Virus record (IMG/VR): IMGVR_UViG_3300023179_005186
Span: 124,001-188,000 of that record
Length of the DNA stretch: 64,000 nt
Direction: 5' to 3' (one strand)
The notes under the pieces were generated by a model that was given only the letters and a program-made list of their open reading frames with translations, was not told the origin of the DNA and made no database searches. This document shows, one piece after another, positions 6,044-59,474 of this stretch. Every line of letters begins with the position of its first letter. The first letter of the stretch is position 1. The position numbers and the translations under genes were made by a program.

Positions 6044-6067
6044 TCAATTTTTATATATAAAAATTGA
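6044..6067. promoter_or_regulatory. Back-to-back AAAATTGA early promoters for divergent TFIIB and UDG
   Basis: TCAATTTT at 6044-6051 (minus strand) and AAAATTGA at 6060-6067; this is the Mimiviridae early promoter motif. Confidence 0.8.
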
Positions 6068-9298: not shown

Positions 9299-12200
9299 AT
9301 GCAGACTATTGAGCCAAAAGATTCAGAACTAACAAATAATAAAATTTTCGAGCTTTTGGATGCAAGATTTGGCCGCAGATATATTTTATATGAACATCTT
9401 CATAATTCTTACAACGAATTAATTAATCAGATTATTTATTATTTACAAACAAATGATAATATTTTTCAAGAAAACAGAATTGGAGATTTAATATACAGAT
9501 ATCGGTTCAAATATGAAAATCTATTTGTTCGTCCTCCCTTAAATGATAACGGAGATTCACTTATGTATCCTATGGATGCACGTGATAGGAATTTAACTTA
9601 TTCAATTAAAATTTTAGCAAAGATTACGCAACTACAAGAAATTTATGATTTAAATAAAAGTGAAATTATTAGTGTTAAAGTTATAGGAACTCCTGTCGAA
9701 AGAGAAACAGCTGTTATTTTACCTTGTATGGTCCGTTCCAAGTATTGTTCACTTGAAATAAATCGTGACTATAACAAGAAGGATTGTGAATATGATCCTG
9801 GAGGATATTTTATAGTTGGTGGTTCTGAAAAAATAGTTTTATCAATAGAAAGGATGGTAGAAAATAAACCACTTGTGTTTATAAAAAAAGATGCTGGTTT
9901 TATTAATTATTCAGTTAAAGTTAATTCAAGATCTTCAAATCCAAATATTATGATGCAACCAATTGAAATTAGAATAGAAAAAAATTATGATATTAAAATT
10001 AAGGTTCCAATTTTACAGGAAGTATCAGTATTTGTATTAATGAGAGCATTAGGTTTAGAAACTGATAAAGAAATTATCAAATATATTTTATACAATGATA
10101 ATGACATTGATATGTTAAATTTACTTAAAATATCTATAGATCTATCCAAGACTGAAAATAAGAAACTTATATTAACAAAAGAAGATGCTTATTTTAGTTT
10201 AACTAATAAATTACGAGTTGTTAAAAAATTTACTGATAAAGATAAAAAGCTCTTATATGATGAAAAAAAAGAGCATTTGCAACAATTATTAAGTACAGCA
10301 TTTATGCCACATATGAATAATAATCATCATGCTGATATTTTTAAAGCAAAAGCTTATTTTTTAGGTTTAATGGTAAATCGTTTATTAAATGCTTATTTAG
10401 GAAGAACTGAACCTGATGATCGTGATTCATTTGTTAATAAGCGAATCGATATGCCAGGTGAATTAATTTTTGATCTATTTAAGCAATATTATAAAAAAAT
10501 GTTAAATGATTGTAACAAGTTTTTTAATAGAAGATCTGCTTCAAATCATGATAATCCTCTAAATATTATTAATCAAATTAAGCCAACAACTATTGAACAA
10601 AATATTAAATCTGCAATGATGACGGGAAATTGGGGGAAAAAAAAAGGTGTTGCGCAAATGTATCCAAGACTAACTTTTTTACAATCATTATCTTTTCTAC
10701 GTAGAGTTGATCAATCAAGTTCAGAGGCATCTGCTAGTAAATTAACTGGTCCTAGACATTATCATCCATCTCAAGTTGGTTTTTTATGTCTAACAGGTGA
10801 TACAGAAGTGTTGATGTCAGATGGTTCGATAAAGTTAATAAAAGATATTAAAAATGGTGAATCAGTTATTTCGGTTGATAATAAAACTATGACAGAGGTA
10901 TCAACTCCAATTAAAAATTGGTTTAAACAAGATTGTGAAAAATTATTAAAGATAACAACTATTTCTGGTAGAGTTATTAAATGTACTCCAGATCATAAAT
11001 TATTAACTAAAGTTGGTGATAAATATGATTATGTAGAAGTTCAAAATTTAAAACCAAATCAAGATAGTTTAATTACTCGTCATACAGTAAAATATATTCC
11101 TCTAGATAAAACAACTGAAGTTATTATTACTGATGTATTAGAATTATACAAGATTCCATTACTTGAATTAGGATATTTAGACAAGTCTATATCACAAGAA
11201 AAATTAGAAATATTAGCAAGATTAATTGGTTTAAATATTGCAAATGGTCATATAGAAATCAAACCTGATGAAAAATACTATAATTGTGAATTTTTAGTAG
11301 CTGAAGAAAAAGATGCATTAGACTTATTAGATGATATTATGAAATTAGGTTTTGGAACTTCATCAATTAAAAGTGTAAAAAATAATCATATTAAATATAA
11401 AAATGGTAAACATACTATTTATAACACATGGAGTATTATTAAAAATGGTGTATTTGCTTATTTACTAAATTATTTGGGAGCTTTTGATAGAAAAAATCAA
11501 TTAGAATGTAAAATTCCTGATTGGATTATGAATGCAAATAAAAGAATTCAAAGAGAGTTTATAAGTGGTTTTATTGCTGGTAATGGATCTAGATTATTTA
11601 TGAATTTAAATAAAGGTATTTTTAAAATTAATTGTAGTAGATTGTGTCAAGTTTCTTCAAAAGTAAATGTAGTTGACACAATTAAATATTTAGAACAATT
11701 TATTATAATATTTAAACAGTTTAATATTGATTGTTATGTTAGTAAATTAAAAGAAACAGATGATTATGATAAAACACGTTGTGAAATTATCTTTAAACAA
11801 TCTTATGAAAATTTAAATAATTATGCTGATATAATAAACTTTAGATATTGTAATGAAAAAAGAAAAAAATCAGCTTTAACAATTGAATATATAAAATACA
11901 AAAATTATTATAGTGCAAATATTCCTAAAGATAAAAAACTTGGTACTAATCCATGTTTAAGTTATAAAGATTTTATTAAAGAAACGAATATCAATGATGA
12001 AAACTTTTTAATTAAAATAAAGTCGATTGAAGAAATCCCTACAGAACCAGTTTATGATTTTGAGACAATATATGATACACATAGTTTTGTAGCTGGTTCA
12101 CTTTACACTAGTAATTGCCCGGTAGAGTCTCCAGAGCATTCTAACATTGGTTTAGTAAAACATTTAAGTTTAGTTGGATCAATTACAGTAGGATCTCAAG

Positions 12201-15200
12201 ATCAGTCAATATTAATATATAATATGTTAAATGAAAATAAAAACTTTATACATTTAGATAATCATTCTGCGACATACTTGGCTACAATAACAAAAGTATT
12301 TTTAAATGGTGAATGGATTGGTATGACAGATAATCCAGATGATTTATATCAAGAATTACGAACTTTAAAACAGAATGGTATTATTTTAAGAACAAATGGT
12401 ATAACTCTCGATTATACAAGAGGTGAAATAAGAATTTATACAGAGTCTGGGCGTTTATACAGACCGGTATTTACTGTTAAAAATAATAAATTATTAATGA
12501 CGGATAAGATAATTGATGATATTTGCAAGGATTCAAAATTAAAAGGATTAAATAAATTTGATGCATTAATTACTAAATATCCAGAAACAATTGATTATTT
12601 AGATATGGAAGAACAGTTTTATGCATTAGTTGCAGATTATAAAGATAAAGTTTTAGAAATGAAATCTAGAGAATTAAATGTATTTGATGATACAAACGAA
12701 CCTATTATTAATCGTTATGATAAATCAATGATTATGAAATATACTCATTGTGAATTTCATCCAACTGTTATCCTTGGTATTATTGCTGGAAATATTCCTT
12801 TTGCAAATCATAATCAAGGACCAAGAAATATTTTTCAGTATGCACAAGGTAGACAAGCGATGGGTATTTATTCAAGTAATTATCGTGATAGATTGGATAT
12901 TTCATATATTCTTTATCATACACAAAAACCGTTAGTAAATACTAAGATAGCAAAATATGTCCACACAGATATTTTACCTTGTGGTGAAAATGCTGTAGTA
13001 ATGATCGGATGTTATACAGGATATAATCAGGATGATTCTATTATATTTAATCAAACATCTATAGATCGTGGATTATTTAGATCTACATCACTTAAAAAGT
13101 GGAGTTCAAAGATTGAGAAAAATCAATCTACATCACAAGATGATATATTTATGAAACCAGATATTTCAAAACTTACAGGAACAAGACATGCTGTTTATGA
13201 TAAATTAAATGACAAGGGATATGTTCCTGAAGAAACTGTTGTTGAAAATGGAGATGTAATTATTGGAAAAGTAACTCCAATACAACCAGCTCCAGGATCT
13301 AACAAATGTTTTAAAGATTCTTCTGAAATCTATAAATCTCAAGAAACTGCTATAATCGATAAAGTTTTTACGGGAATACATGATTCTGAAGGTTATGAAA
13401 TGATTAAAATTAGAACAAGATCCGAAAGAATTCCAAAGACAGGAGATAAATTTTGTTGTTTTAGCCCAGATCATGACATTTTAACAGAACGTGGTTGGAT
13501 TGGAATAAGTGAAGTAACAAATATGGATAAAGTTGCTTGTTTAAATTATGGAATATTAGAATATAATAATCCAATTCAAGTAATGAATTATGATTATGAA
13601 GGTAAAATGTACTTATTAGATGCATATCAAGTAAATTTAAAAGTAACTCCAAATCACAGAATGTATGTTAAAAAAATAAATTCTGAAAATTATAATATAG
13701 AATTAGCAGAAAATATATTTAATCAGACAAGAATATATAAAAAAAATGCAAATAATTATTTAAATAATGATAAACATCAATTATTAAGTTACTATAATGA
13801 GACTTTAAAAATTAATGTTCACTATCCAACTGGATTTATTCTTAAAAATAATGAAGATATTAATGATATTAAAATATTAGATATTAATGCATGGTTATCA
13901 TTTTTTGGAATATGGATGGCGGAAGGATTTGCTGCTAAAACAGCAAGATCTTTACAAGTAAGTTTTGCCGCTCATAAAAAACGAGTTAAAGATGAGTTAA
14001 CACGTGTTTGTAATATTCTTGGTTATGAAATTAATAAAAAAAAAGATAAATCGTACTCACTAGAAGAAGATATTTGGATAATATCTGATAAAAAGTTGAG
14101 GAAGTATATGGAACCCTTGAGTGTTGGTGCTGTGAATAAATCATTACCAGATTGGGTATGGTATTTAACAAAAGAACAATGTAATTTATTAATTGATGGT
14201 ATGATGTTAGGTGATGGTTATAAAATTAAAGGAACAACTACACGAAGATATGATACATCATCATTAAAATTAGCAAATGATTTTCAAAAACTATGTTTAC
14301 ATGCTGGAATTTGTTGTAATTTAAAACTTAAATATAAAGCTGGTAATGAAACTATTATTAAAACTCCTGGTAGAGAAGGAGAAAAAATAAAATCAACAAG
14401 AGATGCGTATAGATTAACTATTATTTCAAAATCAGAACAAACAGTAAATATTAATAAATTTAATGATTCTTATATTGATTATAAAGGTAAAGTTTATTGT
14501 TGTAGTGTTCCAGGTGAAGGAATAATTTATGTTAGAAGAAACGGGATTCCAATTTGGTGTGGAAACTCGAGACATGGGCGAGTAACTTTTACCCATAACA
14601 GGAGGCTGTGGAATCGTGAGGTTCCAATTCAAGTATTGAATTAACAATACACAGTGTTACCTTCTAGTCGGCAATATCGTCGGGCTAATATTGAATTTTT
14701 CAATATCAAGTGATGATATTGTGGTACGTCAGAGACATCTGATACCTAGGATAGTATAATCATACTATTTGAACAGGCAAGAATTGTGAAAACGGTCAAA
14801 ATCTCAAGAAAACCTTTGAGACAAGACCGTCGGTGTAGTAAAGTCGCGAGGCTTTATGATATCGCGATCGACTGGGTCACAGTTCGGTGAAGTTATAAAT
14901 TAACTTTGCTTAATGTACAGTCAGCCCCCGTGGTGATACGGTGCTACAATGATCAGGATATATTGAAAAGATATTCTAGGGAAGTTGTAGGTTAAACAAG
15001 ATATATATTTACTTGTTTAATGATTAGCGAAAAAGGTACTATCGGTCTAACTTTACATCAATCAGACATGCCCTTTACTAAAGAGGGTATTAGTCCAGAT
15101 TTAATTATTAATCCAAATGCGATCCCGAGTGAAATTCGCTCATGTGGTCTAGCAATAGATTGCAAGTCTCTTATTTATAAAATAAGAGGCAACACTTTCA

Positions 15201-22058: not shown

Positions 22059-22101
22059 TCAATTTTTTACTTAACTAATATGACTAGCTAGTAAAAATTG
22101 A
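22059..22101. promoter_or_regulatory. Divergent AAAATTGA promoters (RPB5 and ORF 22138)
   Basis: TCAATTTT at 22059-22066; AAAATTGA at 22094-22101. Confidence 0.75.
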
Positions 22102-32080: not shown

Positions 32081-32262
32081 TTGACTTATATATATTTATA
32101 TATATTATATTATTCTAAATTCATTTTTTTATTAAATATTAAATTTTTTTATCATCTTAAATGCAGTAAAATTATTTTATTACTTTCTAATCTCTTCTTA
32201 ACCTAATTTTTATATTAAAAATTGATTTTAATATAAAATAATTATATAGTATATAGATTAAT

Positions 32263-42869: not shown

Positions 42870-45131
42870 ATGAATTTAATATATGTATTTGATAATTATT
42901 ATTTTAATATTACAAATACATTTGTTATTAAAAATATTAAAAGATGGATAATATATGAATTACTAAATTTAATAAATAGTAATATATATGAAAATATTAT
43001 TTTAATAAAAACAGGACCAACTATATGTTCATGTAAATTAAATTTAAAAAAAGATAACGTTATTATTAGAATTATTGAAATAATTAATAGTATAATTTAT
43101 AAAAAATATAATACTTATCCTAATATTAATTTAAAAAGAATAATTGATGAATTAAATAATTATTCTGATCAAAATAATAAAATTATTATATTTACTGCTA
43201 TTTATCAACCTGGTTTAACTCAATACAATAAAGAATATCTTAATAAAATTTTAAAAAAATTTAATTCATCTGTTGTTTTTTACAATATTTCAAAATATAA
43301 ATTTTTAAATTTGAACTTTCAAAATATAACAGAAGTATTTATTGATTTTAGAATTAAAGATATTTCAAAATTAATATTACCAATTATTTTTTCAATTGAT
43401 GAAATTGATTTTTCAGATGAATTAAAAAAAGAAACAGAAATTATACTTGTGCAAAATATTTATAATTATTTAGAATTATTAGAGTTTATAAATTATGAAT
43501 TTTTACAAAATGATAAATCTATACAAATTGATGAAAATGATCAAAGAAATCAATTAAATTATAAATTTATATTTTATTATATTTTATTATCAAATAAGTT
43601 AGAAAGAATATTAATAAAAAAAATTAATTATGATGATTTAGAAAATATCATGTTAAAATTTTTAAATATTGATTTAGATAGTTTTGAAATTAATAAAGAA
43701 ATAATTATATTATTAAAAAATTTTAAAAATGTTATAGAAAATATATTTAATAGAAATAAAGATATTTGCCCAATTATAATACCTACTAATCAATTAAATG
43801 AAGAATCATTAAATGTTATATATATATTAGAGTTTTATAAAGAAATTTATTCTAAATTTATTAATTATCATATTGATTCAAATAAAAAAAATTTTAAAAT
43901 ATTAAATGTTAAAACAACTGAAATTTTAATGAAAAATTTAAAATTAATTAATAAAATTAATACAAATGATATTTTAGATAATTCTAAACTGTATATGATG
44001 TCTAATATTACATTAAGTAATTGGTTAGATGAATTTAATGAATTTAATCCATTTGGTATTTTAATTAAATATGATATATCTAAATTTGCTTATAAAGGAT
44101 TAATAGATGAATATTCATCTATAATTTATAATTATCCAGAAATGATAATAAATTCAGTTTCTAATAATTGGGTTAGTCTATATGATTATTATCAAATGAT
44201 TTTAGCAGATGTAAATTATGAAAATGATGAAGAATGTATAAAAAAAAATCATCAATTTAATTTAAATGAATTTATTATTATTGATAATTTAAATGGAGAT
44301 TCTAATGTTATGCTACCAATTTATATTAATAAAAATCACTGGAGATTAGTTAAAAATGTTTGGTCTTATCATATGACTTTTATTAATAATTCATTTGAAT
44401 ATCAGTATAATAAAAAAATGGATAATATATATTATTTGGTTTTACTAAAATGTTTTAATAATTTAAATGATAATACTAAATCTAATAATAATTTATTCAG
44501 ATTATTCATTTGTATTTTAAGAACATGTGCACAGATTAATATTGATAATAAATATATTAATAGCGTTAAAAATGAAAAAGATAAATATTTTAACAAAATA
44601 GTAAATTTTATAAAAATAGAATCAGACAATAAATATTTTAAATTTAAACATGTTTTTATTGATTATTTAATTAGAACTATTCAATTAATTGTTTCTTTTA
44701 ATTCAGATATTCTTACATTAAAAAAAGAACTAGTGTATATTAGAAATATAAAAATTTCTATGTTTATAGAATATAATTTTTCTTCTGACTACTGGAAAAA
44801 TATTAACAATATTTTTAATGATGATAAAGAAAATGAAATTTTAATTTTTAAAAATAAATGTATTGAAAATAATATATCATGGTTTAATTTAGAAAATGAC
44901 ATTATCTCATTGTGTGAATTTGTAAATTTAATATATAAAATAAAAAATTTTAATCAATTTTTAAAATATGTTGACTCTGTAAATGGATGTATACCTGTAG
45001 ATATAGAAGGTTTAATTAATTGTGAAATAATTAAAAATATTTATAATAAATTAGAAAATAATAAAGAATTTAATATAGATTTTTATTTGAAAGAAATTGA
45101 TTTTAATAATTTAATACCTATAGATAATTAA
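42870..45131 (+). CDS. Hypothetical protein
   Basis: 753-aa ORF. Confidence 0.75.
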   Translation: MNLIYVFDNYYFNITNTFVIKNIKRWIIYELLNLINSNIYENIILIKTGPTICSCKLNLKKDNVIIRIIEIINSIIYKKYNTYPNINLKRIIDELNNYSDQNNKIIIFTAIYQPGLTQYNKEYLNKILKKFNSSVVFYNISKYKFLNLNFQNITEVFIDFRIKDISKLILPIIFSIDEIDFSDELKKETEIILVQNIYNYLELLEFINYEFLQNDKSIQIDENDQRNQLNYKFIFYYILLSNKLERILIKKINYDDLENIMLKFLNIDLDSFEINKEIIILLKNFKNVIENIFNRNKDICPIIIPTNQLNEESLNVIYILEFYKEIYSKFINYHIDSNKKNFKILNVKTTEILMKNLKLINKINTNDILDNSKLYMMSNITLSNWLDEFNEFNPFGILIKYDISKFAYKGLIDEYSSIIYNYPEMIINSVSNNWVSLYDYYQMILADVNYENDEECIKKNHQFNLNEFIIIDNLNGDSNVMLPIYINKNHWRLVKNVWSYHMTFINNSFEYQYNKKMDNIYYLVLLKCFNNLNDNTKSNNNLFRLFICILRTCAQINIDNKYINSVKNEKDKYFNKIVNFIKIESDNKYFKFKHVFIDYLIRTIQLIVSFNSDILTLKKELVYIRNIKISMFIEYNFSSDYWKNINNIFNDDKENEILIFKNKCIENNISWFNLENDIISLCEFVNLIYKIKNFNQFLKYVDSVNGCIPVDIEGLINCEIIKNIYNKLENNKEFNIDFYLKEIDFNNLIPIDN

Positions 45132-45179
45132 TCTACCTAAAAAATTGAATAAATAATTAAATATTTAAAATTATAAATT

Positions 45180-47126
45180 ATGAAAATTAAAGATATAATT
45201 ACACAACTAAAAAATGATCCAGAAAATATTATTAATTCTTTGGATCAAACAAATTTAAAAAAATTAATTGATTATCTTCTTGATAAATATCATAATGAAA
45301 ATATATCATTAGTTTCAGATCAATTATTTGATTTTATTAAAGATTATTATGACAAAAAATTTGGAAAAATTAAACAAGTTGGTGCTCCTCTTAAATCAGA
45401 AAATAATAAAATAAAATTACCTTATTATATGGGTAGTTTAGATAAAATTAAACCATCGACCGGAACATTTAATAAATGGATTAATAATTATCCAGGACCA
45501 TATGTAATTTCATATAAATTAGATGGTATCTCAGCATTATTATATAAATCTAATGGTAAAATTCAATTATTTACAAGAGGTAATGGTATCGAAGGTAAAG
45601 ATATTAGTCACTGTATTAATTTAATTGGAATTAATGTATCAAAATTAATTGATGGAGATGCAATACGTGGTGAGTTAATTATAAGCAAAGAAAATTTTAA
45701 AAAAATTGCAGATAAGATGGCAAATGCAAGAAATGCTGTATCAGGTATTATAAATACTAAAAAACCAAATCCTGAAATGTTAAAATTAATTGATTTTGTT
45801 TCATACTGGGTTCTTAATCCAGAATTTAAATGCTCTGATCAACTTAAATATATTGAAAAAAAAGAATTTGTTCCAAGAACAGTTTATTATGAAAATAAAG
45901 AAAAAATAACTATTGATTTATTATCTGAAATGTTAATTAATTCAAGAAAATCTTATAAATATGAAATTGATGGAATTGTTGTTATTGATAATTCAAAATT
46001 TTATGGTCAAGAAATTGGTTCTAATCCAGACTGGGGATTTGCTTTCAAACAAGTTTTAACAGATCAAATTACAGAATCAACAGTTGTAGATGTTATTTGG
46101 GAAATTTCTAAAGATAGATATATTAAACCTAAAATTAAAATTGATACAATTGAACTACTAGGATCTGAAATAACTTTTGCAACAGCTTTTAATGCAAAAT
46201 ATATTGTTGATAATGTGATTGGTCCAGGTGCAATTGTTAAGATAATAAAATCTGGAGATGTTATACCATATATTCAAGAAATTATTAAATCAGCTGATAC
46301 TGGTAAACCAAAAATGCCTAATATGAAATATGAATGGAATGATACAAATGTTGATATTATAGCTGTTGATTTAGATGAAAAAAATATGAATAAAATTATT
46401 GTAAAAAAATTAACATATTTTTTTTCTGAACTTGATATTAGATTTATGGCAGAAGGTACAATTGAAAAATTTGTTAATAATGGATATAATGATTTACCAA
46501 AAATTCTTAAAGCAAAAAAAAATGATTTATACAAAATTGATGGCCTTGGTACAAAATCTATAGATAAAATTTATGAAAGTATTGATTTAGGCTTAACTGG
46601 TAGAAAAATTTATGAAATTATGGCTGCTAGTCAAATTTTTGGAAGAGGTATTGGAACTAAAAAATTTAAACTAATTATTGATGATTATTCTAATATTCTA
46701 GAAATTTATAAAGAAAATGGAAAAGAACATGTTACAAAGTTAATTAATACTATTAACGGATTTGATACAAAAACTACTAATAAAATTGTTGATAATCTAG
46801 ATGCATTTATTGCTTTTTTAAATAATTTAATAAAAATAAAACCTAATTTATTAATTCAAACAAATTCTAAATCTGAACCAACGTTAGCTGATAAAAATAT
46901 ATTAAATCAATTTCAAAATAAAACAATTGTTTTTACTGGTTTTAGAGATAAAGATATCGAAAAAAAATTAGAAAATATTGGTGTTAAAATTACTACTTCA
47001 GTTAGTAATAATACTAATTTTGTTATTGCTTTAGATCCAAATGAAGAATCATCTAAAATTCTTAAAGCTAAAGAATTAAAAATAGAAATTATTTCAAAAG
47101 ATAAATTCTATGAAATTATTAAATAA
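45180..47126 (+). CDS. ligA: NAD-dependent DNA ligase
   Basis: MGSLDK, KLDG adenylation motif, TRGNG, RGE, EIDGIV, AFK, SGDVIP, HhH and C-terminal BRCT (VFTGFR); AAAATTGA at 45141-45148. Confidence 0.95.
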   Translation: MKIKDIITQLKNDPENIINSLDQTNLKKLIDYLLDKYHNENISLVSDQLFDFIKDYYDKKFGKIKQVGAPLKSENNKIKLPYYMGSLDKIKPSTGTFNKWINNYPGPYVISYKLDGISALLYKSNGKIQLFTRGNGIEGKDISHCINLIGINVSKLIDGDAIRGELIISKENFKKIADKMANARNAVSGIINTKKPNPEMLKLIDFVSYWVLNPEFKCSDQLKYIEKKEFVPRTVYYENKEKITIDLLSEMLINSRKSYKYEIDGIVVIDNSKFYGQEIGSNPDWGFAFKQVLTDQITESTVVDVIWEISKDRYIKPKIKIDTIELLGSEITFATAFNAKYIVDNVIGPGAIVKIIKSGDVIPYIQEIIKSADTGKPKMPNMKYEWNDTNVDIIAVDLDEKNMNKIIVKKLTYFFSELDIRFMAEGTIEKFVNNGYNDLPKILKAKKNDLYKIDGLGTKSIDKIYESIDLGLTGRKIYEIMAASQIFGRGIGTKKFKLIIDDYSNILEIYKENGKEHVTKLINTINGFDTKTTNKIVDNLDAFIAFLNNLIKIKPNLLIQTNSKSEPTLADKNILNQFQNKTIVFTGFRDKDIEKKLENIGVKITTSVSNNTNFVIALDPNEESSKILKAKELKIEIISKDKFYEIIK

Positions 47127-47132
47127 AAATTT

Positions 47133-48494
47133 TTATATTGACTTTATTATTTTAATTATATCAGTTGTTGAAATTTCATTAAATCTAGATATGTATTTAT
47201 AATTATTTAATTCGAATGCTCCTGGATACCATTCCTTGTCTTTATTTCCTTTATATTCTTCACCTATGATTACTACATCATATTCACCTTTTTCTATTAA
47301 ATCTTTTGTTATTACTAACGGATAATTTTCTACTATTTCATCTACATATTTACATAATTCGACAGTTTTATATCTAATTTTTTCATTAATAATTGGTTTT
47401 CTTTTATAATTTGCACATACATCATCTCCATGAACTCCAACTATTAATTTTATTGGAACATTAAATGACTCATAAATTTTTTTAAATAATATCATATGTC
47501 CTAAATGACACATATCAAATACTCCACAACAAAATACTCTTAATTTAGTTTCTTTTACTATAAACAGATTTATTTTTAATTCATTTGCAATCCTATTCAT
47601 AATGTTTATAACATAGTTTATTATTATTGGTGTTAGTAATATTGGATTTAATGTAAAAATACAAGGAAAAATACATAATAAATTACTTGATCTTTTTTTA
47701 AAAATTTTAAATGTTATTAATTCTAATAATAAAATTGAATCAACTATGGTTATTGTCCATATAAATTTTGTTGGATATATTATAATTGAAATATACTTTA
47801 TTAAATACCAAACACCTATAAAAAAACCTAATTTAATATTACTAGAATTTGCATTTTTTTCATATATTAATTTTAATAATTTACAAATATTTAATAATAA
47901 TATTCCACCTATAAATAAAAATAAAATATTGTTATTTATTAATATTTTTGGTAATTTTAATCCACATAAAAATACTAGTGATGTTGTTGTTAGAATTAAA
48001 GATACATCTGTTAAACCTTCAAATATAATTTTTCCTTTAATAATTGCCTCATAATGTGGTATCATAAAATGAAAACTTCCTGCTGTTAATAAATAATTTG
48101 ATATATTTTGATCAACTTCAAAATGATACATTAAACAATCGAAAATAATTCCAGCATTTACTAAATCAATTATATGATCTAAATATTCTCCAATTATTGA
48201 TGTATTTTTTATATTTCTAGCATGTATACCATCTATAGCATCAAAATTCATATATAAAAAAACACATATACCCATTATCATATTTGAAGAATAATTTTTA
48301 AAAATATTATAACCAAAAATTACTGATATTAATCCTAATAATGTAATTATATTTGGATGAATATATTTTGGTATCATTTTTTGTACTAATTCCCAAAAAA
48401 ATCTATATCTTTTTGTTAAAAATGTATTGTCTACAGATACATATTTATATTTTTTATAAAAATCTAAATTTTCAATTGATAAATATTTTTTCAT
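47133..48494 (-). CDS. Fusion of choline/ethanolamine phosphotransferase (CDP-alcohol phosphotransferase) and cytidylyltransferase
   Basis: YKYVSVD...PNIITLLG and DAIDGIHAR...SIIGEYLDHIID; C-terminal GVFDMCHLGH, LIVGVH.D, KYVDE and RFNEISTTDII. Confidence 0.9.
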   Translation of the reverse strand: MKKYLSIENLDFYKKYKYVSVDNTFLTKRYRFFWELVQKMIPKYIHPNIITLLGLISVIFGYNIFKNYSSNMIMGICVFLYMNFDAIDGIHARNIKNTSIIGEYLDHIIDLVNAGIIFDCLMYHFEVDQNISNYLLTAGSFHFMIPHYEAIIKGKIIFEGLTDVSLILTTTSLVFLCGLKLPKILINNNILFLFIGGILLLNICKLLKLIYEKNANSSNIKLGFFIGVWYLIKYISIIIYPTKFIWTITIVDSILLLELITFKIFKKRSSNLLCIFPCIFTLNPILLTPIIINYVINIMNRIANELKINLFIVKETKLRVFCCGVFDMCHLGHMILFKKIYESFNVPIKLIVGVHGDDVCANYKRKPIINEKIRYKTVELCKYVDEIVENYPLVITKDLIEKGEYDVVIIGEEYKGNKDKEWYPGAFELNNYKYISRFNEISTTDIIKIIKSI

Positions 48495-48589
48495 TAATAT
48501 TATAACTTTGAAAAAATTTAAATTATTTATATTTATTAAAAAAAAAATATATATAAAATCAAAATAGATATCATTATTTATAATATTGA

Positions 48590-49870
48590 ATGCAAATAGA
48601 TAGTAAAAAACTTACTAATAATTTTAAAAGTTGTATTTTATTAAATGAAAATACAAATAATAATAAATCAGATTTGCAAAATAATAAAGAAAAAAAAAGA
48701 AATGAAAAAAATAAGTTTGATGAATCAAAAGATATTTTAGATCAATCTGAACGAATGCCTGCAAAAAAAATTAAATTTTTTCTTAAAAATTCACAGAATA
48801 TTGATGATGAATCAGAATATACTAATACTCCTAAGGCAAAATTTCATTGTGATAATATATTATGTGATCATAAAAAATATTTTCCTAAATGGTATGAATT
48901 AAATAAAATAAATTTAACAAAAATTAATACATTAGATGATCTTATGAAATTAGCAGAGTATTATCATTGTAGAATGAGAAGAAATTATAATGGTATTGAT
49001 CTTAAAATATTATTTGAAATTACTAATTATCTAAAAGAATTAAATTCAATGATTGGATTAAATATTCTAAAAGAAGAAATTGTTAATATGATTATTTATT
49101 TAATGATTATTAAAAATTCAGATAAAGGTTTAACTCCTGATATGCTTCATGCTGTTGTTACTGGAAGTCCTGGTTGTGGTAAAACAACTTTTATTGAAAT
49201 TGTTGCAAAGATTTATACAAAACTTGGTGTTTTAAAAAAAGGTCATATTGTTAAAGCAAAACGTTCAGAATTAATTGGAAAATATCTAGGTCATACTGCT
49301 GTACAAACTCAACAAAAAATTAATGAGGCAAAAGGTGGAATTTTATTAATTGATGAAGCGTATTCTTTAGGTAATCCCGAAGGTAGAGATTCTTTTTCAA
49401 AAGAATGTATTGATACCTTAAATCAAGCACTTTCTGAAAACAAAGATGACTTTATTTGTATTATTGCTGGATATAAAAATGCATTAGATAGTTCTTTTTT
49501 TAATTATAATGAAGGATTAAGACGAAGATTTCCATTTAGATTTGATATCAAAACTTATACTGCTGAAGAATTAACATTAATATTTATGAAAAAAATTACT
49601 GAACACAATTATTGGATAATTGAATTTAAGAATGAAGAAGTAGAAGAAATAATAAAAAAAAATTTTAAATTATTTGAAAATCAAGGTGGTGATATTGAAT
49701 CACTTTTTTTAAATTTAAAAATTGTTCATAATAAAAGGGTATTTTTATTACCTATTATTGAAAAAAAAAAATTATTAATTATTGATGTAAAAGAATCTAT
49801 TGAAAAATTTATTAAATTAAAAGGTGATTATATCAATAAATATGAAACACCATTTGGATTATACGTTTAA
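48590..49870 (+). CDS. AAA+ ATPase (CbbX/SpoVK-like)
   Basis: GSPGCGKTT, LIGKYLGHT, ILLIDEAYSL, IIAGY and NEGLRRRF. Confidence 0.9.
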   Translation: MQIDSKKLTNNFKSCILLNENTNNNKSDLQNNKEKKRNEKNKFDESKDILDQSERMPAKKIKFFLKNSQNIDDESEYTNTPKAKFHCDNILCDHKKYFPKWYELNKINLTKINTLDDLMKLAEYYHCRMRRNYNGIDLKILFEITNYLKELNSMIGLNILKEEIVNMIIYLMIIKNSDKGLTPDMLHAVVTGSPGCGKTTFIEIVAKIYTKLGVLKKGHIVKAKRSELIGKYLGHTAVQTQQKINEAKGGILLIDEAYSLGNPEGRDSFSKECIDTLNQALSENKDDFICIIAGYKNALDSSFFNYNEGLRRRFPFRFDIKTYTAEELTLIFMKKITEHNYWIIEFKNEEVEEIIKKNFKLFENQGGDIESLFLNLKIVHNKRVFLLPIIEKKKLLIIDVKESIEKFIKLKGDYINKYETPFGLYV

Positions 49871-50774: not shown

Positions 50775-51608
50775 ATGTCTAATCCTACAAATAGTTCATC
50801 TAATATTAGTAATAAAAGATGTATAAGTAAATTTTATTTTGGTACAAAAGATTCAAATCCTTTTGTTTACCATAATAAAGATACTGAAAAAAAAAAATCT
50901 ATTAATAAAAAAAGAAAACATAAAAATGATGAATCTGATAATGAAGATGAAGATGAAGAAAGTGATGATCCTTTTACAATAAACAAAATATTTTATGAAA
51001 ATAAAATATTTCTTAAGGAAAATCATTTGTATTTTCATACTAATGTAAATCAAAAATCTTGTGAACTAGTTAAACAATTAATGAGAACTTATAGTTCTAA
51101 ATTTAATAAATTACAAAAAACTCATACTTGTGTTAAATTTGAATGTAAGCCATTGTATATACATATATATTCTCCAGGAGGAGATGTTTATGCAGGTCTT
51201 GCTCTTTATGATTTTATAATACAATATCGTGAACATATTCCTATCTATACAATTGTAGAAGGAATTGCTGCTAGTGCAGCAACATTTATTTCTGTTGCTG
51301 GAACAAAGAGATTTATTACACCAAGTTCATATATGTTAATTCATCAACTTTCCACATTTATGTATGGAAACTTTGAACAATTAAAAGACGAATTTGATAA
51401 TTCAAAAAAACTTATGGATAAAATTATGAATATTTATTCAGAACATACTACTATTACAAAAAAACGTATTCCTAAAATACTTAAGCATGATTTAATTTGG
51501 GATGCTGAAGAATGTGTTCAAAATGGACTTGTTGATAAAATTAAATTAGTCGACTTGTTTAATGATGAAGATAAAGATGATGATCAAGAAGAAAATAATG
51601 AAGAATAA
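50775..51608 (+). CDS. clpP: ClpP-like serine protease
   Basis: IYSPGGDV, GIAASAA (Ser), MLIHQ (His) and HDLIWDAEEC..GLVD (Asp). Confidence 0.9.
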   Translation: MSNPTNSSSNISNKRCISKFYFGTKDSNPFVYHNKDTEKKKSINKKRKHKNDESDNEDEDEESDDPFTINKIFYENKIFLKENHLYFHTNVNQKSCELVKQLMRTYSSKFNKLQKTHTCVKFECKPLYIHIYSPGGDVYAGLALYDFIIQYREHIPIYTIVEGIAASAATFISVAGTKRFITPSSYMLIHQLSTFMYGNFEQLKDEFDNSKKLMDKIMNIYSEHTTITKKRIPKILKHDLIWDAEECVQNGLVDKIKLVDLFNDEDKDDDQEENNEE

Positions 51609-57539: not shown

Positions 57540-59474
57540 ATGAAAAAATTAAAAAAAATAAAAAAAGAGAGTAAACTCAAGACAATAGATAAGAATAAAT
57601 TTTATAGTGCAACAAGTTTAGTAAATTTCATAAGATCAGATTGTATAGTTGATTTAATTGAAACATTAAATAAAAATAATTATATAATAGATTTTGAAGA
57701 TGAATTAAGAATAAAAAAAAGAAATTTAGAAGAGTCATCAAATTCTAATTCTAATTTAAGTAATAACTGTTCTGATCTAATTACAAAAAGAAGAAGAACA
57801 TCATCATTTGATTATATTGTAGATGATGGATATAAATTTGAAGCGAATATAATAATTAAAATAAAAGAAAAATTAATAGAGAATAATGAATTATCAAAAT
57901 TAATAGAATTAAGTGATATTGATATTAATATTAGATATGAAAGAACTTTAAAATTACTTTTAAGTAAATCATATGATATATTATTGGGTAGTATATTAAT
58001 TAATGAATCAAATAAAACATATGGCTATCCAGATTTAATAGTTTCAGGTTATTGGATAAAAAAATATATAATTAATAGTCCAATAAATATAATAGGTGAT
58101 AGAAGCAAATACTATATTATTGATATAAAATCATCATCAATAAATTTGATTGGAGGTGGTGAATATGTGTCATCAGGTTTATTATATGATGGTTATAAAG
58201 CACAAATTTATATATACATACAAGCATTAAATAAAATATTAAAATCAAATATATCAATTGGATTTATATTAGGAAAAAATTATCAATATAGTACAGGTGG
58301 AAATAAAATTAGAATAGATGATCCATTTGATAAACTTGGATTAATAGATTATTCTTATGAAAAAAAGAATGGAAGAGATTTTGAAGATAAAATAATACAA
58401 GCACTTAAATGGAAAGATGATTTAAAAAAAAATTATAATAATTATTCTTTATTGCCGATTGAAAATAATTTATTATTTCCAAATATGAAAAATCCCTATG
58501 ATAAAAATTATAAAAAGATTAAAAAAACTATAGCATTAGCTAATAAAGAAATAACATTATTATGGAATTGTGGATTAAAGAATAGAGAACTAGCATGGTT
58601 AAAAGGAATAAAAAATTATGATAATGAAAATTTATCACCAGATATATTAGGATTTACAAAAAAATCATCAAGATATAATATATTATATTCAATGTTAAAA
58701 ATAAATAGGGAATCAAATGATTTGATAATATTTAACCCAATAAATAATATAAATGAATGGCAAAATAGTGTTTCAAATGAATTTTTTGTAGATTTTGAGA
58801 CATATTCAAATGAGAGGGTGTATGGTGAAGATATATATATGATTGATATTAATACTCAAATAATATATATGATTGGTGTAAATTATTCAAGTAAATTCAA
58901 GTGTTTTATATTAAAATTTAATTATCATGAAGGAATAAAAAATAAAATTAAAATAAAAAAAAATTTAAAATGTAATTATGAATCATATGTATTTTGTGAT
59001 AATGAAAAAGATTTAATAATGCAATTTGTAAAATTTATAAATTCTTTTAATATAAAAAATGATTTATCTATTTACTATAAAAATACAAGATTAATACATT
59101 GGTCAAAAGCTGAACCAATAATATTTAATAAAAAATTAAGAGAATATAAGTTAAACGAATTAATGTATAATTTACCATGGTATGATTTATTAGATATATT
59201 TAAAAATGAGAAATATCCAATTATAATAAAAGGTTGTTTTGGTTTTGGTTTAAAAGAAATAATAAGTAAATTAAATCAGTATGATTTTATAAAATTAAGT
59301 TGGCCAGAATTAGATGATGGTTTATTATCAAGTTTTAAGGCAAGAGATATATACACAGATAAAGTAGAATCTGAAAATAAGGCAATTACAATGATAGATA
59401 TAGTTGAATATAATTATATTGATTGTATAGCTTTAGATATGATATTAAAATGGATTCGTGGTCTTATTGTATAA
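57540..59474 (+). CDS. RecB/PD-(D/E)XK plus RNase H-like (YprB-type) nuclease
   Basis: GYPDLIV...IIDIK...Q...Y, FVDFET, DLL..F..K, FGLKEI and EYNYIDC. Confidence 0.75.
   Translation: MKKLKKIKKESKLKTIDKNKFYSATSLVNFIRSDCIVDLIETLNKNNYIIDFEDELRIKKRNLEESSNSNSNLSNNCSDLITKRRRTSSFDYIVDDGYKFEANIIIKIKEKLIENNELSKLIELSDIDINIRYERTLKLLLSKSYDILLGSILINESNKTYGYPDLIVSGYWIKKYIINSPINIIGDRSKYYIIDIKSSSINLIGGGEYVSSGLLYDGYKAQIYIYIQALNKILKSNISIGFILGKNYQYSTGGNKIRIDDPFDKLGLIDYSYEKKNGRDFEDKIIQALKWKDDLKKNYNNYSLLPIENNLLFPNMKNPYDKNYKKIKKTIALANKEITLLWNCGLKNRELAWLKGIKNYDNENLSPDILGFTKKSSRYNILYSMLKINRESNDLIIFNPINNINEWQNSVSNEFFVDFETYSNERVYGEDIYMIDINTQIIYMIGVNYSSKFKCFILKFNYHEGIKNKIKIKKNLKCNYESYVFCDNEKDLIMQFVKFINSFNIKNDLSIYYKNTRLIHWSKAEPIIFNKKLREYKLNELMYNLPWYDLLDIFKNEKYPIIIKGCFGFGLKEIISKLNQYDFIKLSWPELDDGLLSSFKARDIYTDKVESENKAITMIDIVEYNYIDCIALDMILKWIRGLIV

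What the first reader, a model, noticed from the sequence alone, without database searches (positions are those of the whole stretch)
47133..48494. Two Kennedy-pathway steps fused in one viral protein
Seen: a eukaryote-type CEPT/EPT membrane domain with the full CDP-alcohol motif is joined in frame to an HxGH cytidylyltransferase domain. Established: in yeast and animals these consecutive PC/PE synthesis steps are separate enzymes. Inference: channelled phospholipid (or phosphonolipid) synthesis for the virion inner membrane.
Basis: partly seen in the sequence, partly recalled or inferred. Interest (0 to 1): 0.6.

Follow-up and report, generated by a model that had tools for sequence, protein, structure and literature searches.

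The report
Fused two-step phospholipid headgroup enzyme
A lake-water giant virus encodes one intact membrane protein joining a CTP-dependent headgroup activator to the enzyme that puts that headgroup on diacylglycerol; the fusion is real and conserved, but it also occurs in many other giant viruses and several protist lineages.

Summary
Window 47133-48494 (-) is one uninterrupted 453-aa ORF. Residues 1-306 form a eukaryote-type choline/ethanolamine phosphotransferase domain with the full CDP-alcohol motif. An 11-residue linker follows, then an HxGH cytidylyltransferase domain (318-453).

Contigs from two other studies cross the domain junction with no differences.

About 100 clusters at 50% identity share this architecture, with both catalytic residue sets nearly invariant. 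Members lie in giant-virus contigs. Members are also labelled Cyanophora, Bangiopsis, Pteridomonas and Amoebophrya; related Atlas clusters are labelled diatoms and rotifers. So the fusion is neither virus-specific nor unique.

Most likely it is a dimeric ER-type enzyme that makes a CDP-amino-alcohol and transfers it to diacylglycerol beside the same membrane. It lacks the regulatory membrane-binding domain of cellular CCT.

The headgroup is unresolved:
- The transferase carries the Trp/Ala pair of choline-accepting enzymes.
- The cytidylyltransferase pocket lacks the Asp/Trp/His of CCT and the Asp/His of ECT.
- Its closest relative outside the fusion is fused to a HisC/CobD-like PLP enzyme, which points to an amino-alcohol phosphate.

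Channelling and a virion-membrane role are untested inferences. I found no published description. I rate it a new variant of a known kind, of moderate interest.

The parts
47133..48494 (-). Whole gene: 453-aa ORF plus stop codon, encoding the fused phosphotransferase-cytidylyltransferase
   Evidence: The identical protein is on record from other contigs. Independent contigs match with 0 differences.
47577..48494 (-). aa 1-306: eukaryote-type CDP-choline/ethanolamine:diacylglycerol phosphotransferase domain. It has N-terminal helix-strand-helix elements, 10 transmembrane helices and a second strand between TM4 and TM5.
   Evidence: PF01066. PDB sequence matches to CPT1, CEPT1 and CHPT1. AlphaFold2 model with pLDDT 92.3 and its secondary structure. 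Foldseek matches to 8gyw, 9uet, 8ero and 8ul9. Architecture of xlCHPT1 from PMC10182977.
48165..48242 (-). aa 85-110: CDP-alcohol phosphotransferase signature D-x2-DG-x2-AR-x8-G-x3-D-x3-D. It includes E103 (hCEPT1 Glu151) and H107 (yCPT1 His118, hCEPT1 His155).
   Evidence: D85, D88, G89, A92, R93, G102, E103, D106, H107 and D110 are kept in at least 104 of 106 family members.
48393..48395 (-). W34 in the juxtamembrane helix, equivalent to yCPT1 Trp35, which faces the headgroup
   Evidence: Alignment to 8ul9. Role from PMC11696302. Trp in 91 of 106 members.
48237..48239 (-). A86, the first x of DxxDG, equivalent to yCPT1 Ala97. Ala goes with choline-accepting enzymes and Gly with ethanolamine-preferring ones.
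   Evidence: In the family: Ala 62, Gly 30, Ser 7. Among the full-length members listed, Gly is confined to the window's own clade.
48054..48056 (-). H147, equivalent to hCEPT1 His197, the second candidate general base near the glycerol backbone
   Evidence: Alignment to 8gyw. Role from PMC10156783. His in 103 of 106 members.
47544..47576 (-). aa 307-317: short linker between the last transmembrane helix and the first strand of the cytidylyltransferase domain
   Evidence: The span from aa 306 to 320 holds 11-19 residues in all 106 members.
47136..47543 (-). aa 318-453: single HxGH-class cytidylyltransferase domain (CCT/ECT/GCT fold). The protein ends right after the last helix, with no amphipathic membrane-binding or regulatory tail.
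   Evidence: PF01467. PDB matches to human ECT 3elb and to rat and Plasmodium CCT. Foldseek TM up to 0.87 by target. C-terminal alignment.
47496..47507 (-). aa 330-333: HLGH, the CTP-binding HxGH motif
   Evidence: H330 and H333 are kept in 106 of 106 members.
47400..47405 (-). K364-R365. K364 aligns with the catalytic Lys122 of rat CCT. The adjacent Arg is a hallmark of this family.
   Evidence: Alignment to 3hl4. Lys in 105 of 106 and Arg in 90 of 106 members.
47163..47186 (-). aa 437-444: RFNEISTT, the counterpart of the RTEGISTS motif of CCT and ECT
48495..48589 (.). 95-bp AT-rich intergenic region shared with the divergently oriented AAA-ATPase gene (48590-49870, +). It presumably holds the promoter. 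No AAAATTGA motif lies in it.

Best explanation
The gene encodes a bifunctional, membrane-anchored enzyme that carries out the last two steps of a Kennedy-type phospholipid pathway.

The C-terminal domain (aa 318-453) joins CTP to a small amino-alcohol phosphate to give the CDP-alcohol. Phosphoethanolamine is the most likely substrate and phosphocholine is possible.

The N-terminal 10-helix domain (aa 1-306) transfers the phospho-alcohol from that CDP-alcohol to diacylglycerol, giving phosphatidylethanolamine and/or phosphatidylcholine and releasing CMP.

Both ends of the membrane domain, and its substrate opening, face the cytosol. The cytidylyltransferase is tethered by about 11 residues, so it sits beside that opening.

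Two copies probably pair through the cytidylyltransferase domains, as in CCT and GCT.

The domain is permanently at the membrane and lacks the amphipathic regulatory segment of cellular CCT. The virus would therefore bypass the host's regulated, rate-limiting step and raise local phospholipid output during infection.

Shown here: the ORF, the domains, the motifs, their conservation, the fold and the distribution. Inferred: both activities, the headgroup, proximity channelling, the dimer and the role in infection.
For: - Both domains score above Pfam's cut-offs.
- Every functional residue named in the CPT1, CEPT1 and CHPT1 structure papers is present. W34 and A86 match yCPT1 Trp35 and Ala97. 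N48, E103, H107 and H147 match hCEPT1 Asn86, Glu151, His155 and His197. All four motif aspartates are present.
- Those residues are kept in at least 103 of 106 family members, apart from W34 (91 of 106) and the variable position 86.
- The cytidylyltransferase keeps HxGH, the catalytic Lys and the R-x3-ISTT motif in nearly all members.
- The AlphaFold2 model (pLDDT 92.3, pTM 0.81) shows 10 transmembrane helices with a short TM9. It also shows the eukaryote-specific strand pair (b1 at 20-23, b2 at 156-159), as described for xlCHPT1. In xlCHPT1 both termini and the substrate opening are cytosolic.
- Foldseek matches CEPT1 and CHPT1 (E 8e-12 to 7e-10) and CCT, ECT and GCT (TM by target up to 0.87).
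- The linker is always short, with 11-19 residues between aa 306 and 320.
- The protein ends right after the last cytidylyltransferase helix.
- Homodimer test: ipSAE 0.49 against a best control of 0.00. 20 of 30 solved homo-pairs and 1 of 23 single chains reach that mark. The runs share at least 54% of contacts and pLDDT is 81. The confident contacts are aa 328-338, 368-384 and 440-451, all in the cytidylyltransferase domain and including the KYVDE segment.
- A cytidylyltransferase domain nested inside the window's own clade (99% SH-aLRT) is fused to a HisC/CobD-like PLP enzyme (P0059). It has the same pocket signature. That enzyme class makes amino-alcohol phosphates.
- The same viral record holds a PlsC-type acyltransferase with the NHxxxxD and FPEGT motifs and a second, short CDP-alcohol transferase.
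- The sequence is found in an RNA library from lake water.
Against: - No activity has been measured.
- The headgroup pocket of the cytidylyltransferase is not canonical. The positions of rat CCT Asp82, Trp151 and His168 are Cys323, Leu393 and Ile410. Eukaryotic ECT N-domains have Asp, Tyr and His there. The substrate therefore cannot be read from homology.
- Per domain, ECT-N (57.6 bits) and CCT (56.1 bits) are equally close.
- No choline or ethanolamine kinase, APH-type kinase, PF00155 enzyme or PAP2 phosphatase was found in the 315-kb record. Headgroup phosphate and diacylglycerol must come from the host or from the unsampled part of the genome, since the record is estimated at 28% complete.
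- PF01467 domains elsewhere serve phosphonate and glycan pathways.
- The dimer test found no confident contact between the membrane domains, and a pass may reflect memory of solved CCT and GCT dimers.
- Presence in an RNA library does not prove transcription.
Confidence: 0.65

Rival explanations
1. Phosphonolipid synthase. The cytidylyltransferase domain activates 2-aminoethylphosphonate to CMP-AEP, and the membrane domain transfers it to diacylglycerol, giving a C-P headgroup lipid that resists phospholipases.
For: PF01467-type cytidylyltransferases fused to PEP mutase were recovered as relatives of the domain (P0093 and P0097, 39-41% identity). A viral contig carries PEP mutase, a TPP decarboxylase, a methyltransferase and a standalone PF01467 gene that is 39% identical to this domain (L011). 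PMC8942020 reports PF01467 PntC fusions and an NCLDV genome with an AEP core. The non-canonical pocket (no Asp, Trp or His) leaves room for a different substrate.
Against: No PEP mutase lies in the 315-kb record. In the cytidylyltransferase-domain tree, the PEP-mutase-fused domains fall outside the clade of all fusion proteins. The membrane domain keeps the Trp/Ala pair of choline and ethanolamine enzymes. L011's gene content looks like a phosphonate cluster unrelated to this family's membrane domain.
Confidence: 0.08
2. Same two-step logic but a different product. One option is another amino-alcohol or polyol headgroup, such as serinol, aminopropanol, N-methylethanolamine or glycerol. Another is another acceptor, such as ceramide giving ceramide phosphoethanolamine, or alkyl-acylglycerol giving ether lipids.
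For: The pocket residues differ from both CCT and ECT. The nested relative P0059 is fused to a HisC-like aminotransferase (TIGR01141 228 bits, CobD model 135 bits). From my own knowledge, such enzymes can make serinol phosphate or aminopropanol phosphate as well as ethanolamine phosphate. Position 86 varies among Ala, Gly, Ser, Cys and Asn across the family, which suggests headgroup size is not fixed. From my own knowledge, a CDP-alcohol phosphotransferase in insects uses ceramide as acceptor.
Against: The membrane domain's closest solved relatives by sequence and fold are all diacylglycerol choline or ethanolamine phosphotransferases. The two histidines near the glycerol backbone are conserved. 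Nothing here points positively to ceramide or to a polyol.
Confidence: 0.14
3. Only the membrane transferase is catalytic. The C-terminal domain is a degenerate cytidylyltransferase fold that serves as a dimerisation or CDP-alcohol/CTP-sensing module, like the weakly active second domain of ECT.
For: The pocket has lost Asp, Trp and His. The confident dimer contacts are all in this domain. Standalone versions of the membrane domain exist in other giant-virus contigs (P0216 in L019).
Against: HxGH is kept in 106 of 106 members, the catalytic Lys in 105 of 106, and the R-x3-ISTT motif and Asp327 are kept in nearly all. That pattern indicates selection on catalysis. The domain resembles the N-terminal ECT domain (57.6 bits) more than the C-terminal one (39.4 bits).
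Confidence: 0.06
4. Artefact: two adjacent genes joined by a sequencing or assembly error, or a chimeric contig.
For: The window is a metagenome assembly. All laid runs were contigs, not raw reads.
Against: Contigs from two other studies cross the junction with 0 differences. About 100 diverged clusters have the same continuous architecture with a conserved short linker.
Confidence: 0.01

Closest known systems
Eukaryotic choline/ethanolamine phosphotransferases: human CEPT1 (8gyw), human and Xenopus CHPT1 (9uet, 8ero), yeast CPT1 (8ul9)
   Same: The signature motif is complete. The domain has 10 transmembrane helices with a short TM9, the N-terminal helix-strand-helix elements and the b1/b2 sheet. 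The equivalents of Trp35/Ala97, Asn86, Glu151, His155 and His197 are all present. The termini and substrate opening are cytosolic.
   Different: Identity is only about 18% in the structural alignment. The domain is about 306 aa, shorter than the 380-400 aa enzymes. It is fused at its C-terminus to a cytidylyltransferase. The Gln of DGKQAR is His here, as in yeast CPT1. No confident membrane-domain dimer contact was predicted.
CTP:phosphoethanolamine cytidylyltransferase (ECT/PCYT2, 3elb and 4xsv) and CTP:phosphocholine cytidylyltransferase (CCT/PCYT1A, 3hl4 and 4mvc; PfCCT)
   Same: The HxGH motif, catalytic Lys, KYVDE dimer segment and R-x3-ISTT motif are present. The fold matches, with TM up to 0.87 by target. 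The Tyr that aligns with CCT Tyr173 is kept.
   Different: There is a single domain, not the tandem pair of ECT. There is no amphipathic membrane-binding or regulatory segment as in CCT. Asp82, Trp151 and His168 of CCT are Cys, Leu and Ile. The family has its own Lys-Arg and Glu-Tyr signatures. The fusion's domains form a clade apart from the ECT N- and C-domains.
Bifunctional IPCT/DIPPS of hyperthermophiles (NCBIfam NF041135), which joins a cytidylyltransferase to a CDP-alcohol phosphotransferase
   Same: It joins a CTP-dependent activating enzyme and the CDP-alcohol phosphotransferase that uses its product in one polypeptide. It is the known precedent for this logic.
   Different: The window protein scores 23 bits against a cut-off of 580. 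From my own knowledge, the domain order is reversed, the cytidylyltransferase has a different (NTP-transferase) fold, the membrane domain has 6 helices, and the product is a soluble solute rather than a lipid.
Cytidylyltransferase fusions of phosphonate tailoring pathways (PntC fused to PEP mutase; PMC6697681, PMC8942020)
   Same: A PF01467 or related cytidylyltransferase is fused to the enzyme of a neighbouring pathway step. CDP-alcohol transferase genes lie in some of those clusters.
   Different: The fusion partner there is PEP mutase, not the transferase. Those domains fall outside this family's clade. No PEP mutase lies in this record.

Membership tests
CDP-alcohol phosphotransferase, eukaryotic CPT/EPT/CEPT type (PF01066) | Signature D-x2-DG-x2-AR-x7-8-G-x3-D-x3-D | tested here: met
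   aa 85-110. The motif definition is from PMC11696302. It is conserved in at least 104 of 106 members.
CDP-alcohol phosphotransferase, eukaryotic CPT/EPT/CEPT type (PF01066) | Profile score above Pfam's gathering threshold | tested here: met
   41 bits against 22
CDP-alcohol phosphotransferase, eukaryotic CPT/EPT/CEPT type (PF01066) | Ten transmembrane helices plus the eukaryote-specific N-terminal helix-strand-helix elements and the b1/b2 sheet over the cytosolic opening | tested here: met
   AlphaFold2 secondary structure compared with the description of xlCHPT1. Foldseek matches to 8gyw, 9uet, 8ero and 8ul9. This is a predicted model, not a solved structure.
CDP-alcohol phosphotransferase, eukaryotic CPT/EPT/CEPT type (PF01066) | Cytidine-binding Asn and Glu and the two candidate catalytic His (hCEPT1 Asn86, Glu151, His155, His197) | tested here: met
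   N48, E103, H107 and H147. They are kept in 106, 104, 104 and 103 of 106 members.
CDP-alcohol phosphotransferase, eukaryotic CPT/EPT/CEPT type (PF01066) | Headgroup selectivity pair (yCPT1 Trp35 with Ala97 for choline, or Gly for ethanolamine) | tested here: inconclusive
   W34 and A86 are present, which predicts that choline is accepted. The paper's authors call this a tendency, not a rule. The family varies at this position: Ala 62, Gly 30, Ser 7.
CDP-alcohol phosphotransferase, eukaryotic CPT/EPT/CEPT type (PF01066) | Transfers phosphocholine or phosphoethanolamine from the CDP-alcohol to diacylglycerol | not testable with these tools
   Needs an enzyme assay or complementation.
HxGH cytidylyltransferases of the CCT/ECT/GCT class (PF01467) | Profile score above threshold, HxGH, catalytic Lys, R-x3-ISTT motif, (R/K)YVDE segment | tested here: met
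   63 bits against 21. HLGH at 330-333, K364, RFNEISTT at 437-444 and KYVDE at 382-386.
CTP:phosphocholine cytidylyltransferase (CCT) | Choline pocket: Asp82, Trp151, His168, Tyr173 (rat); D623, W692, H709, Y714 (PfCCT) | tested here: not met
   C323, L393, I410 and Y414. Only the Tyr is kept.
CTP:phosphocholine cytidylyltransferase (CCT) | Amphipathic membrane-binding, auto-inhibitory segment after the catalytic domain | tested here: not met
   The protein ends about 10 residues after the ISTT motif.
CTP:phosphoethanolamine cytidylyltransferase (ECT/PCYT2) | Two tandem cytidylyltransferase domains; the N-domain has Asp before the Gly of strand 1 and a His-Gly-(Asp/Asn)-Asp segment | tested here: not met
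   There is a single domain. It has Cys323 and Ile-Gly-Glu-Glu in place of those residues. The domain falls outside the ECT N- and C-domain clades.
Bifunctional IPCT/DIPPS (NF041135) | Score above NCBIfam's cut-off over both domains | tested here: not met
   23.2 bits against 580, and only the transferase part matches.
The CEPT-like + cytidylyltransferase fusion family itself (unnamed; JGI label 'cytidyltransferase-like protein') | Full-length collinear match, both motifs, short linker | tested here: met
   88% to 25% identity to about 60 proteins. About 100 full-length clusters. The window sits in a 100%-supported clade of 41 AT-rich sequences.

The most novel reading that the evidence does not exclude
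The family's cytidylyltransferase has lost the Asp/Trp/His headgroup pocket of CCT and the Asp/His of ECT, and gained its own Lys-Arg and Glu-Tyr signature. It may have done so because it activates a headgroup that host enzymes do not, such as an unusual amino-alcohol phosphate or a phosphonate. If so, giant viruses and some protists would use this fused enzyme to write a distinct, possibly lipase-resistant, headgroup into membranes during infection. The host's regulated step in phospholipid synthesis would have no control over that output.
Probability: 0.15. Interest if true: 0.75.

Novelty: new variant of a known kind. Interest (0 to 1): 0.45.

Why it matters
Cells control phosphatidylcholine and phosphatidylethanolamine synthesis mainly at the cytidylyltransferase step. 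This protein lacks the regulatory segment and is permanently tethered next to the final transferase. That is a simple way for a virus to force membrane lipid output when it builds its factory and internal membranes.

The family is large: about 100 clusters at 50% identity in giant viruses and in glaucophyte, red-algal, stramenopile and alveolate proteins. Related Atlas clusters are labelled diatoms and rotifers. In the literature I could search it is undescribed.

It offers three things:
- a compact, testable model for substrate handover between a soluble-type and a membrane enzyme;
- a marker for virus-driven lipid remodelling in lakes and oceans;
- a natural single-gene route from phospho-headgroup to phospholipid for synthetic-cell work.

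Tried and rejected
1. Kinase search. No PF01633 (choline/ethanolamine kinase) or PF01636 (APH) match lies in the 315-kb record. This is uninformative because CheckV puts completeness at 28%.

2. PEP mutase, PF00155 and PAP2 searches of the record found nothing.

3. Searching related viral records for kinase or PEP mutase. Only one of five handles was held. The one hit, L011, is a phosphonate cluster with only a cytidylyltransferase-domain relative. It does not carry the fusion.

4. The Mimivirus-type early promoter word AAAATTGA is not upstream of the gene and is not enriched in the window (33 found, 34.9 expected). I make no statement on expression timing.

5. Deciding ECT versus CCT by homology. 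The per-domain bit scores are equal (57.6 against 56.1). No named CCT or GCT sequences could be fetched for the tree; the third word-index search returned only family members. The domain tree therefore has ECT but no CCT or GCT references.

6. Measuring the distance and orientation between the two active sites.

7. Literature. Nine searches found no description of this fusion. Absence from the held library is not proof that it is unpublished.

8. The Atlas fold search added nothing beyond the sequence-feature search.

9. The two "joints" in the read-laying output have 21-letter sides in AT-rich sequence, with one contig each. I took them as chance matches.

10. Membrane-domain dimerisation was not supported by confident contacts, so I make no claim about it.

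No alternative genetic code was used. No spliced model was involved. The large representative search was used because the question of whether the fusion is virus-specific rests on absence of relatives.
Full report
**What is there.** Window 47133-48494 on the minus strand is a single 453-aa ORF with no internal stop.
- Pfam places a CDP-alcohol phosphotransferase domain at aa 45-121 (PF01066, E 3.4e-10, 41 bits against a cut-off of 22).
- Pfam places a cytidylyltransferase domain at aa 321-448 (PF01467, E 4.4e-17, 63 bits against 21).
- The complete D-x2-DG-x2-AR-x8-G-x3-D-x3-D signature lies at aa 85-110, HLGH at 330-333 and RFNEISTT at 437-444.

The window belongs to a giant virus. It encodes an intein-bearing RNA polymerase subunit 2, a D5-type primase-helicase, topoisomerase IA, an NAD-dependent DNA ligase, an SNF2 helicase and a ClpP-like protease. 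Its G+C content is about 20%. It lies in a 315,722-bp IMG/VR record estimated to be 28% complete. Runs that hold the sequence are lake and freshwater metagenomes.

**The joint is real.**
- The identical protein is on record from two contigs, the longest 524,495 bp.
- Logan contigs from two other studies cover 47399-47858 and 47100-47721 with zero differences. They cross the domain junction at about 47540-47580.
- A word-index search found about 60 proteins of about 455 aa with both domains, at 88% to 25% identity.
- The exhaustive profile search found 609 proteins at E below 1e-30. About 100 clusters at 50% identity match over the full length, at 450-733 aa.

**The membrane domain.** By sequence it matches only eukaryotic choline/ethanolamine phosphotransferases strongly: yeast CPT1, human CEPT1 and Xenopus CHPT1, at E 2e-13 to 6e-12. 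The match includes the N-terminal juxtamembrane segment that prokaryotic relatives lack.

An AlphaFold2 model built on 54 family members is confident (pLDDT 92.3, pTM 0.81). It shows helix 7-15, strand 20-23, helix 25-38, ten transmembrane helices with a short ninth, and a second strand at 156-159 between TM4 and TM5. The xlCHPT1 paper describes this architecture, eukaryote-specific strand pair included. It also places both termini and the substrate opening on the cytosolic side (PMC10182977). Foldseek puts CEPT1 and CHPT1 first (E 8e-12 to 7e-10, TM 0.66-0.67 by target).

Every residue those structure papers single out is present:

| Window residue | Equivalent | Source |
|---|---|---|
| W34 | yCPT1 Trp35 | |
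| A86 | yCPT1 Ala97 | |
| N48 | hCEPT1 Asn86 | |
| E103 | hCEPT1 Glu151 | |
| H107 | hCEPT1 His155 | |
| H147 | hCEPT1 His197 | |

These are kept in at least 103 of 106 members, apart from W34 (91 of 106) and position 86. Position 86 is Ala in 62, Gly in 30 and Ser in 7. Among the full-length members listed, Gly occurs only in the window's own clade. By the yeast rule, Ala goes with choline-accepting enzymes and Gly with ethanolamine-preferring ones. The window protein has Ala. The authors themselves call this a tendency.

**The cytidylyltransferase domain.** It matches human ECT (N-domain 57.6 bits, C-domain 39.4 bits) and rat CCT (56.1 bits) about equally per domain. By fold it matches CCT, ECT and GCT with TM up to 0.87 by target. 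HxGH, the catalytic Lys, Asp327 and the R-x3-ISTT motif are almost invariant.

The headgroup pocket is not canonical. The choline-site residues named for PfCCT (D623, W692, H709, Y714) correspond, by my own mapping onto the rat CCT alignment, to Asp82, Trp151, His168 and Tyr173. Those positions are Cys323, Leu393, Ile410 and Tyr414 in the window protein. Eukaryotic ECT N-domains have Asp, Tyr and His at the first three. The eukaryote-labelled fusion proteins keep the Asp, and some keep the His. The loss is therefore derived in the viral clade.

The family has its own Lys-Arg (364-365) and Glu-Tyr (413-414) signatures. The protein ends right after the last helix, so there is no CCT-type amphipathic regulatory segment.

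**A clue to the substrate.** In a tree of cytidylyltransferase domains, all fusion proteins group together. They are separate from the ECT N- and C-domains and from domains fused to PEP mutase, methyltransferase, LicD or a dehydrogenase.

One non-fusion protein, P0059, nests inside the window's own clade (99% SH-aLRT). It has the same pocket signature. Its other half is a HisC/CobD-like PLP enzyme (TIGR01141 228 bits, CobD model 135 bits). From my own knowledge, that class makes amino-alcohol phosphates. This favours a primary amino-alcohol phosphate such as phosphoethanolamine. It argues against a specific link to phosphonates.

**How it probably works.** CTP and the headgroup phosphate are joined on the cytosolic domain. 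The CDP-alcohol then has only to reach the cytosolic opening of the membrane domain, which is tethered 11-19 residues away in every member. There diacylglycerol attacks it, giving the phospholipid and CMP.

A homodimer test passed, with ipSAE 0.49 against a best control of 0.00.
- That mark is reached by 20 of 30 solved homo-pairs and 1 of 23 single chains.
- The runs share at least 54% of contacts, and pLDDT is 81.
- All confident contacts are in the cytidylyltransferase domain (328-338, 368-384, 440-451).
- From my own knowledge, this is the surface used by CCT and GCT dimers, so the pass may reflect memory of those structures.

Proximity channelling, the dimer and the escape from host regulation are inferences.

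The same record also encodes a PlsC-type acyltransferase with NHxxxxD and FPEGT motifs, and a second 194-aa CDP-alcohol transferase. This fits a dispersed viral glycerolipid gene set.

**Distribution and novelty.** Members lie in compact, ORFan-rich, intron-free contigs typical of giant viruses, including GVMAG assemblies.

| Label | Protein |
|---|---|
| Cyanophora paradoxa | P0145 |
| Amoebophrya sp. | P0257 |
| Pteridomonas danica | P0135 |
| Bangiopsis sp. | P0150 |
| Diatoms, rotifers | Atlas clusters |

In the full-length tree the window sits in a 100%-supported clade of 41 AT-rich sequences. The eukaryote-named proteins sit in the other half. The tree is unrooted, so the direction of transfer is open.

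Unfused membrane domains also exist in giant-virus contigs (P0216). One member carries a third, UMP-kinase-like domain (P0119).

Nine literature searches found no description of the fusion. The known precedent for the logic is the archaeal and bacterial IPCT/DIPPS enzyme. The window protein scores 23 bits against that model's cut-off of 580, so it is not a member.

**Verdict.** Two Kennedy-type steps in one protein is the best reading (0.65). The fusion is not virus-specific, the headgroup is unresolved, and channelling and a virion-membrane role are untested. It is a new variant of a known kind and of moderate interest.

**Limits.**
- All laid runs were contigs, so transcription is not shown.
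- The record is incomplete, so absences in it are weak.
- No named CCT or GCT references were available for the tree.
- Model coordinates could not be measured.

Noticed in passing
window 9299-14644 (+): The RNA polymerase second-largest subunit gene is 1781 aa. It carries an intein (Intein_splicing and Hint, aa 496-933) and a further LAGLIDADG match at aa 1630-1713, which may be a second intein or homing endonuclease. The region is also the most G+C-rich part of the window (0.27-0.31 against about 0.20).
   Followed up: no
G000:C1:286030-286614 (L003:1309-1893, -), outside the window: A second, short (194 aa) CDP-alcohol phosphotransferase with a full motif lies in the same viral record. Its closest matches are phosphatidylserine, PGP and PI(P) synthases, that is the CDP-diacylglycerol-using type (Pfam 72 bits; PDB E about 1e-4).
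   Followed up: partly
G000:C1 about 232191-232880 (L018:1192-1881, -) and L018:1897-3012 (+), outside the window: A PlsC-type glycerolipid acyltransferase (NHVSEFD and FPEGT motifs) lies next to a 371-aa ORF with a cytochrome-P450-like heme-binding motif (FGSGVRKCAG). The P450 reading rests on the motif alone.
   Followed up: partly
P0119 (733 aa, JGI contig of 10,144 bp): One family member is a triple fusion: CEPT-like domain, cytidylyltransferase and a C-terminal archaeal-type UMP-kinase-like domain (TIGR02076, E 1.4e-40, below the cut-off). This suggests recycling of the CMP released by the transferase. That reading is speculative.
   Followed up: no
P0059 in L006:914-2389: A HisC/CobD-like PLP enzyme is fused to a cytidylyltransferase that nests inside the window's viral clade. 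Two NAD-dependent sugar epimerase/dehydratase genes and a DUF3431 gene flank it. It probably makes a CDP-amino-alcohol for glycan decoration.
   Followed up: partly
L011:3880-12585 (IMG/VR contig of 23,268 bp): A viral-catalogue contig carries a phosphonate cluster. It holds PEP mutase, a split TPP decarboxylase, a methyltransferase, a RuBisCO-like protein, a PhyH dioxygenase, an NTP-transferase, a standalone PF01467 cytidylyltransferase and a glycosyltransferase.
   Followed up: partly
window 50775-51608 (+): A ClpP-like protease (PF00574, E 7e-29) has a low-complexity acidic N-terminal region and an acidic C-terminal tail.
   Followed up: no
window 42870-45131 (+) and 57540-59474 (+): Two large ORFs (753 and 644 aa) have no Pfam match at E 0.001. 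Seven further ORFs of 210-381 aa around the gene also have none.
   Followed up: no
L002:1351-2163 (-), G000:C1 about 243725-244537, outside the window: A 270-aa ORF has a weak PF01467 match in the genome scan (18.8 bits, below the cut-off) and an H-x-G-H-like PPHKGH motif. Pfam gives no hit at E 0.001. It may be a divergent nucleotidyltransferase.
   Followed up: partly
window 45141-45148, 32218-32225, 22094-22101, 6060-6067 (+): The word AAAATTGA is not enriched overall. It does sit 30-45 bp upstream of several start codons (ligase, primase-helicase and others), as early promoters do in mimivirus relatives. It is absent upstream of the fusion gene.
   Followed up: partly
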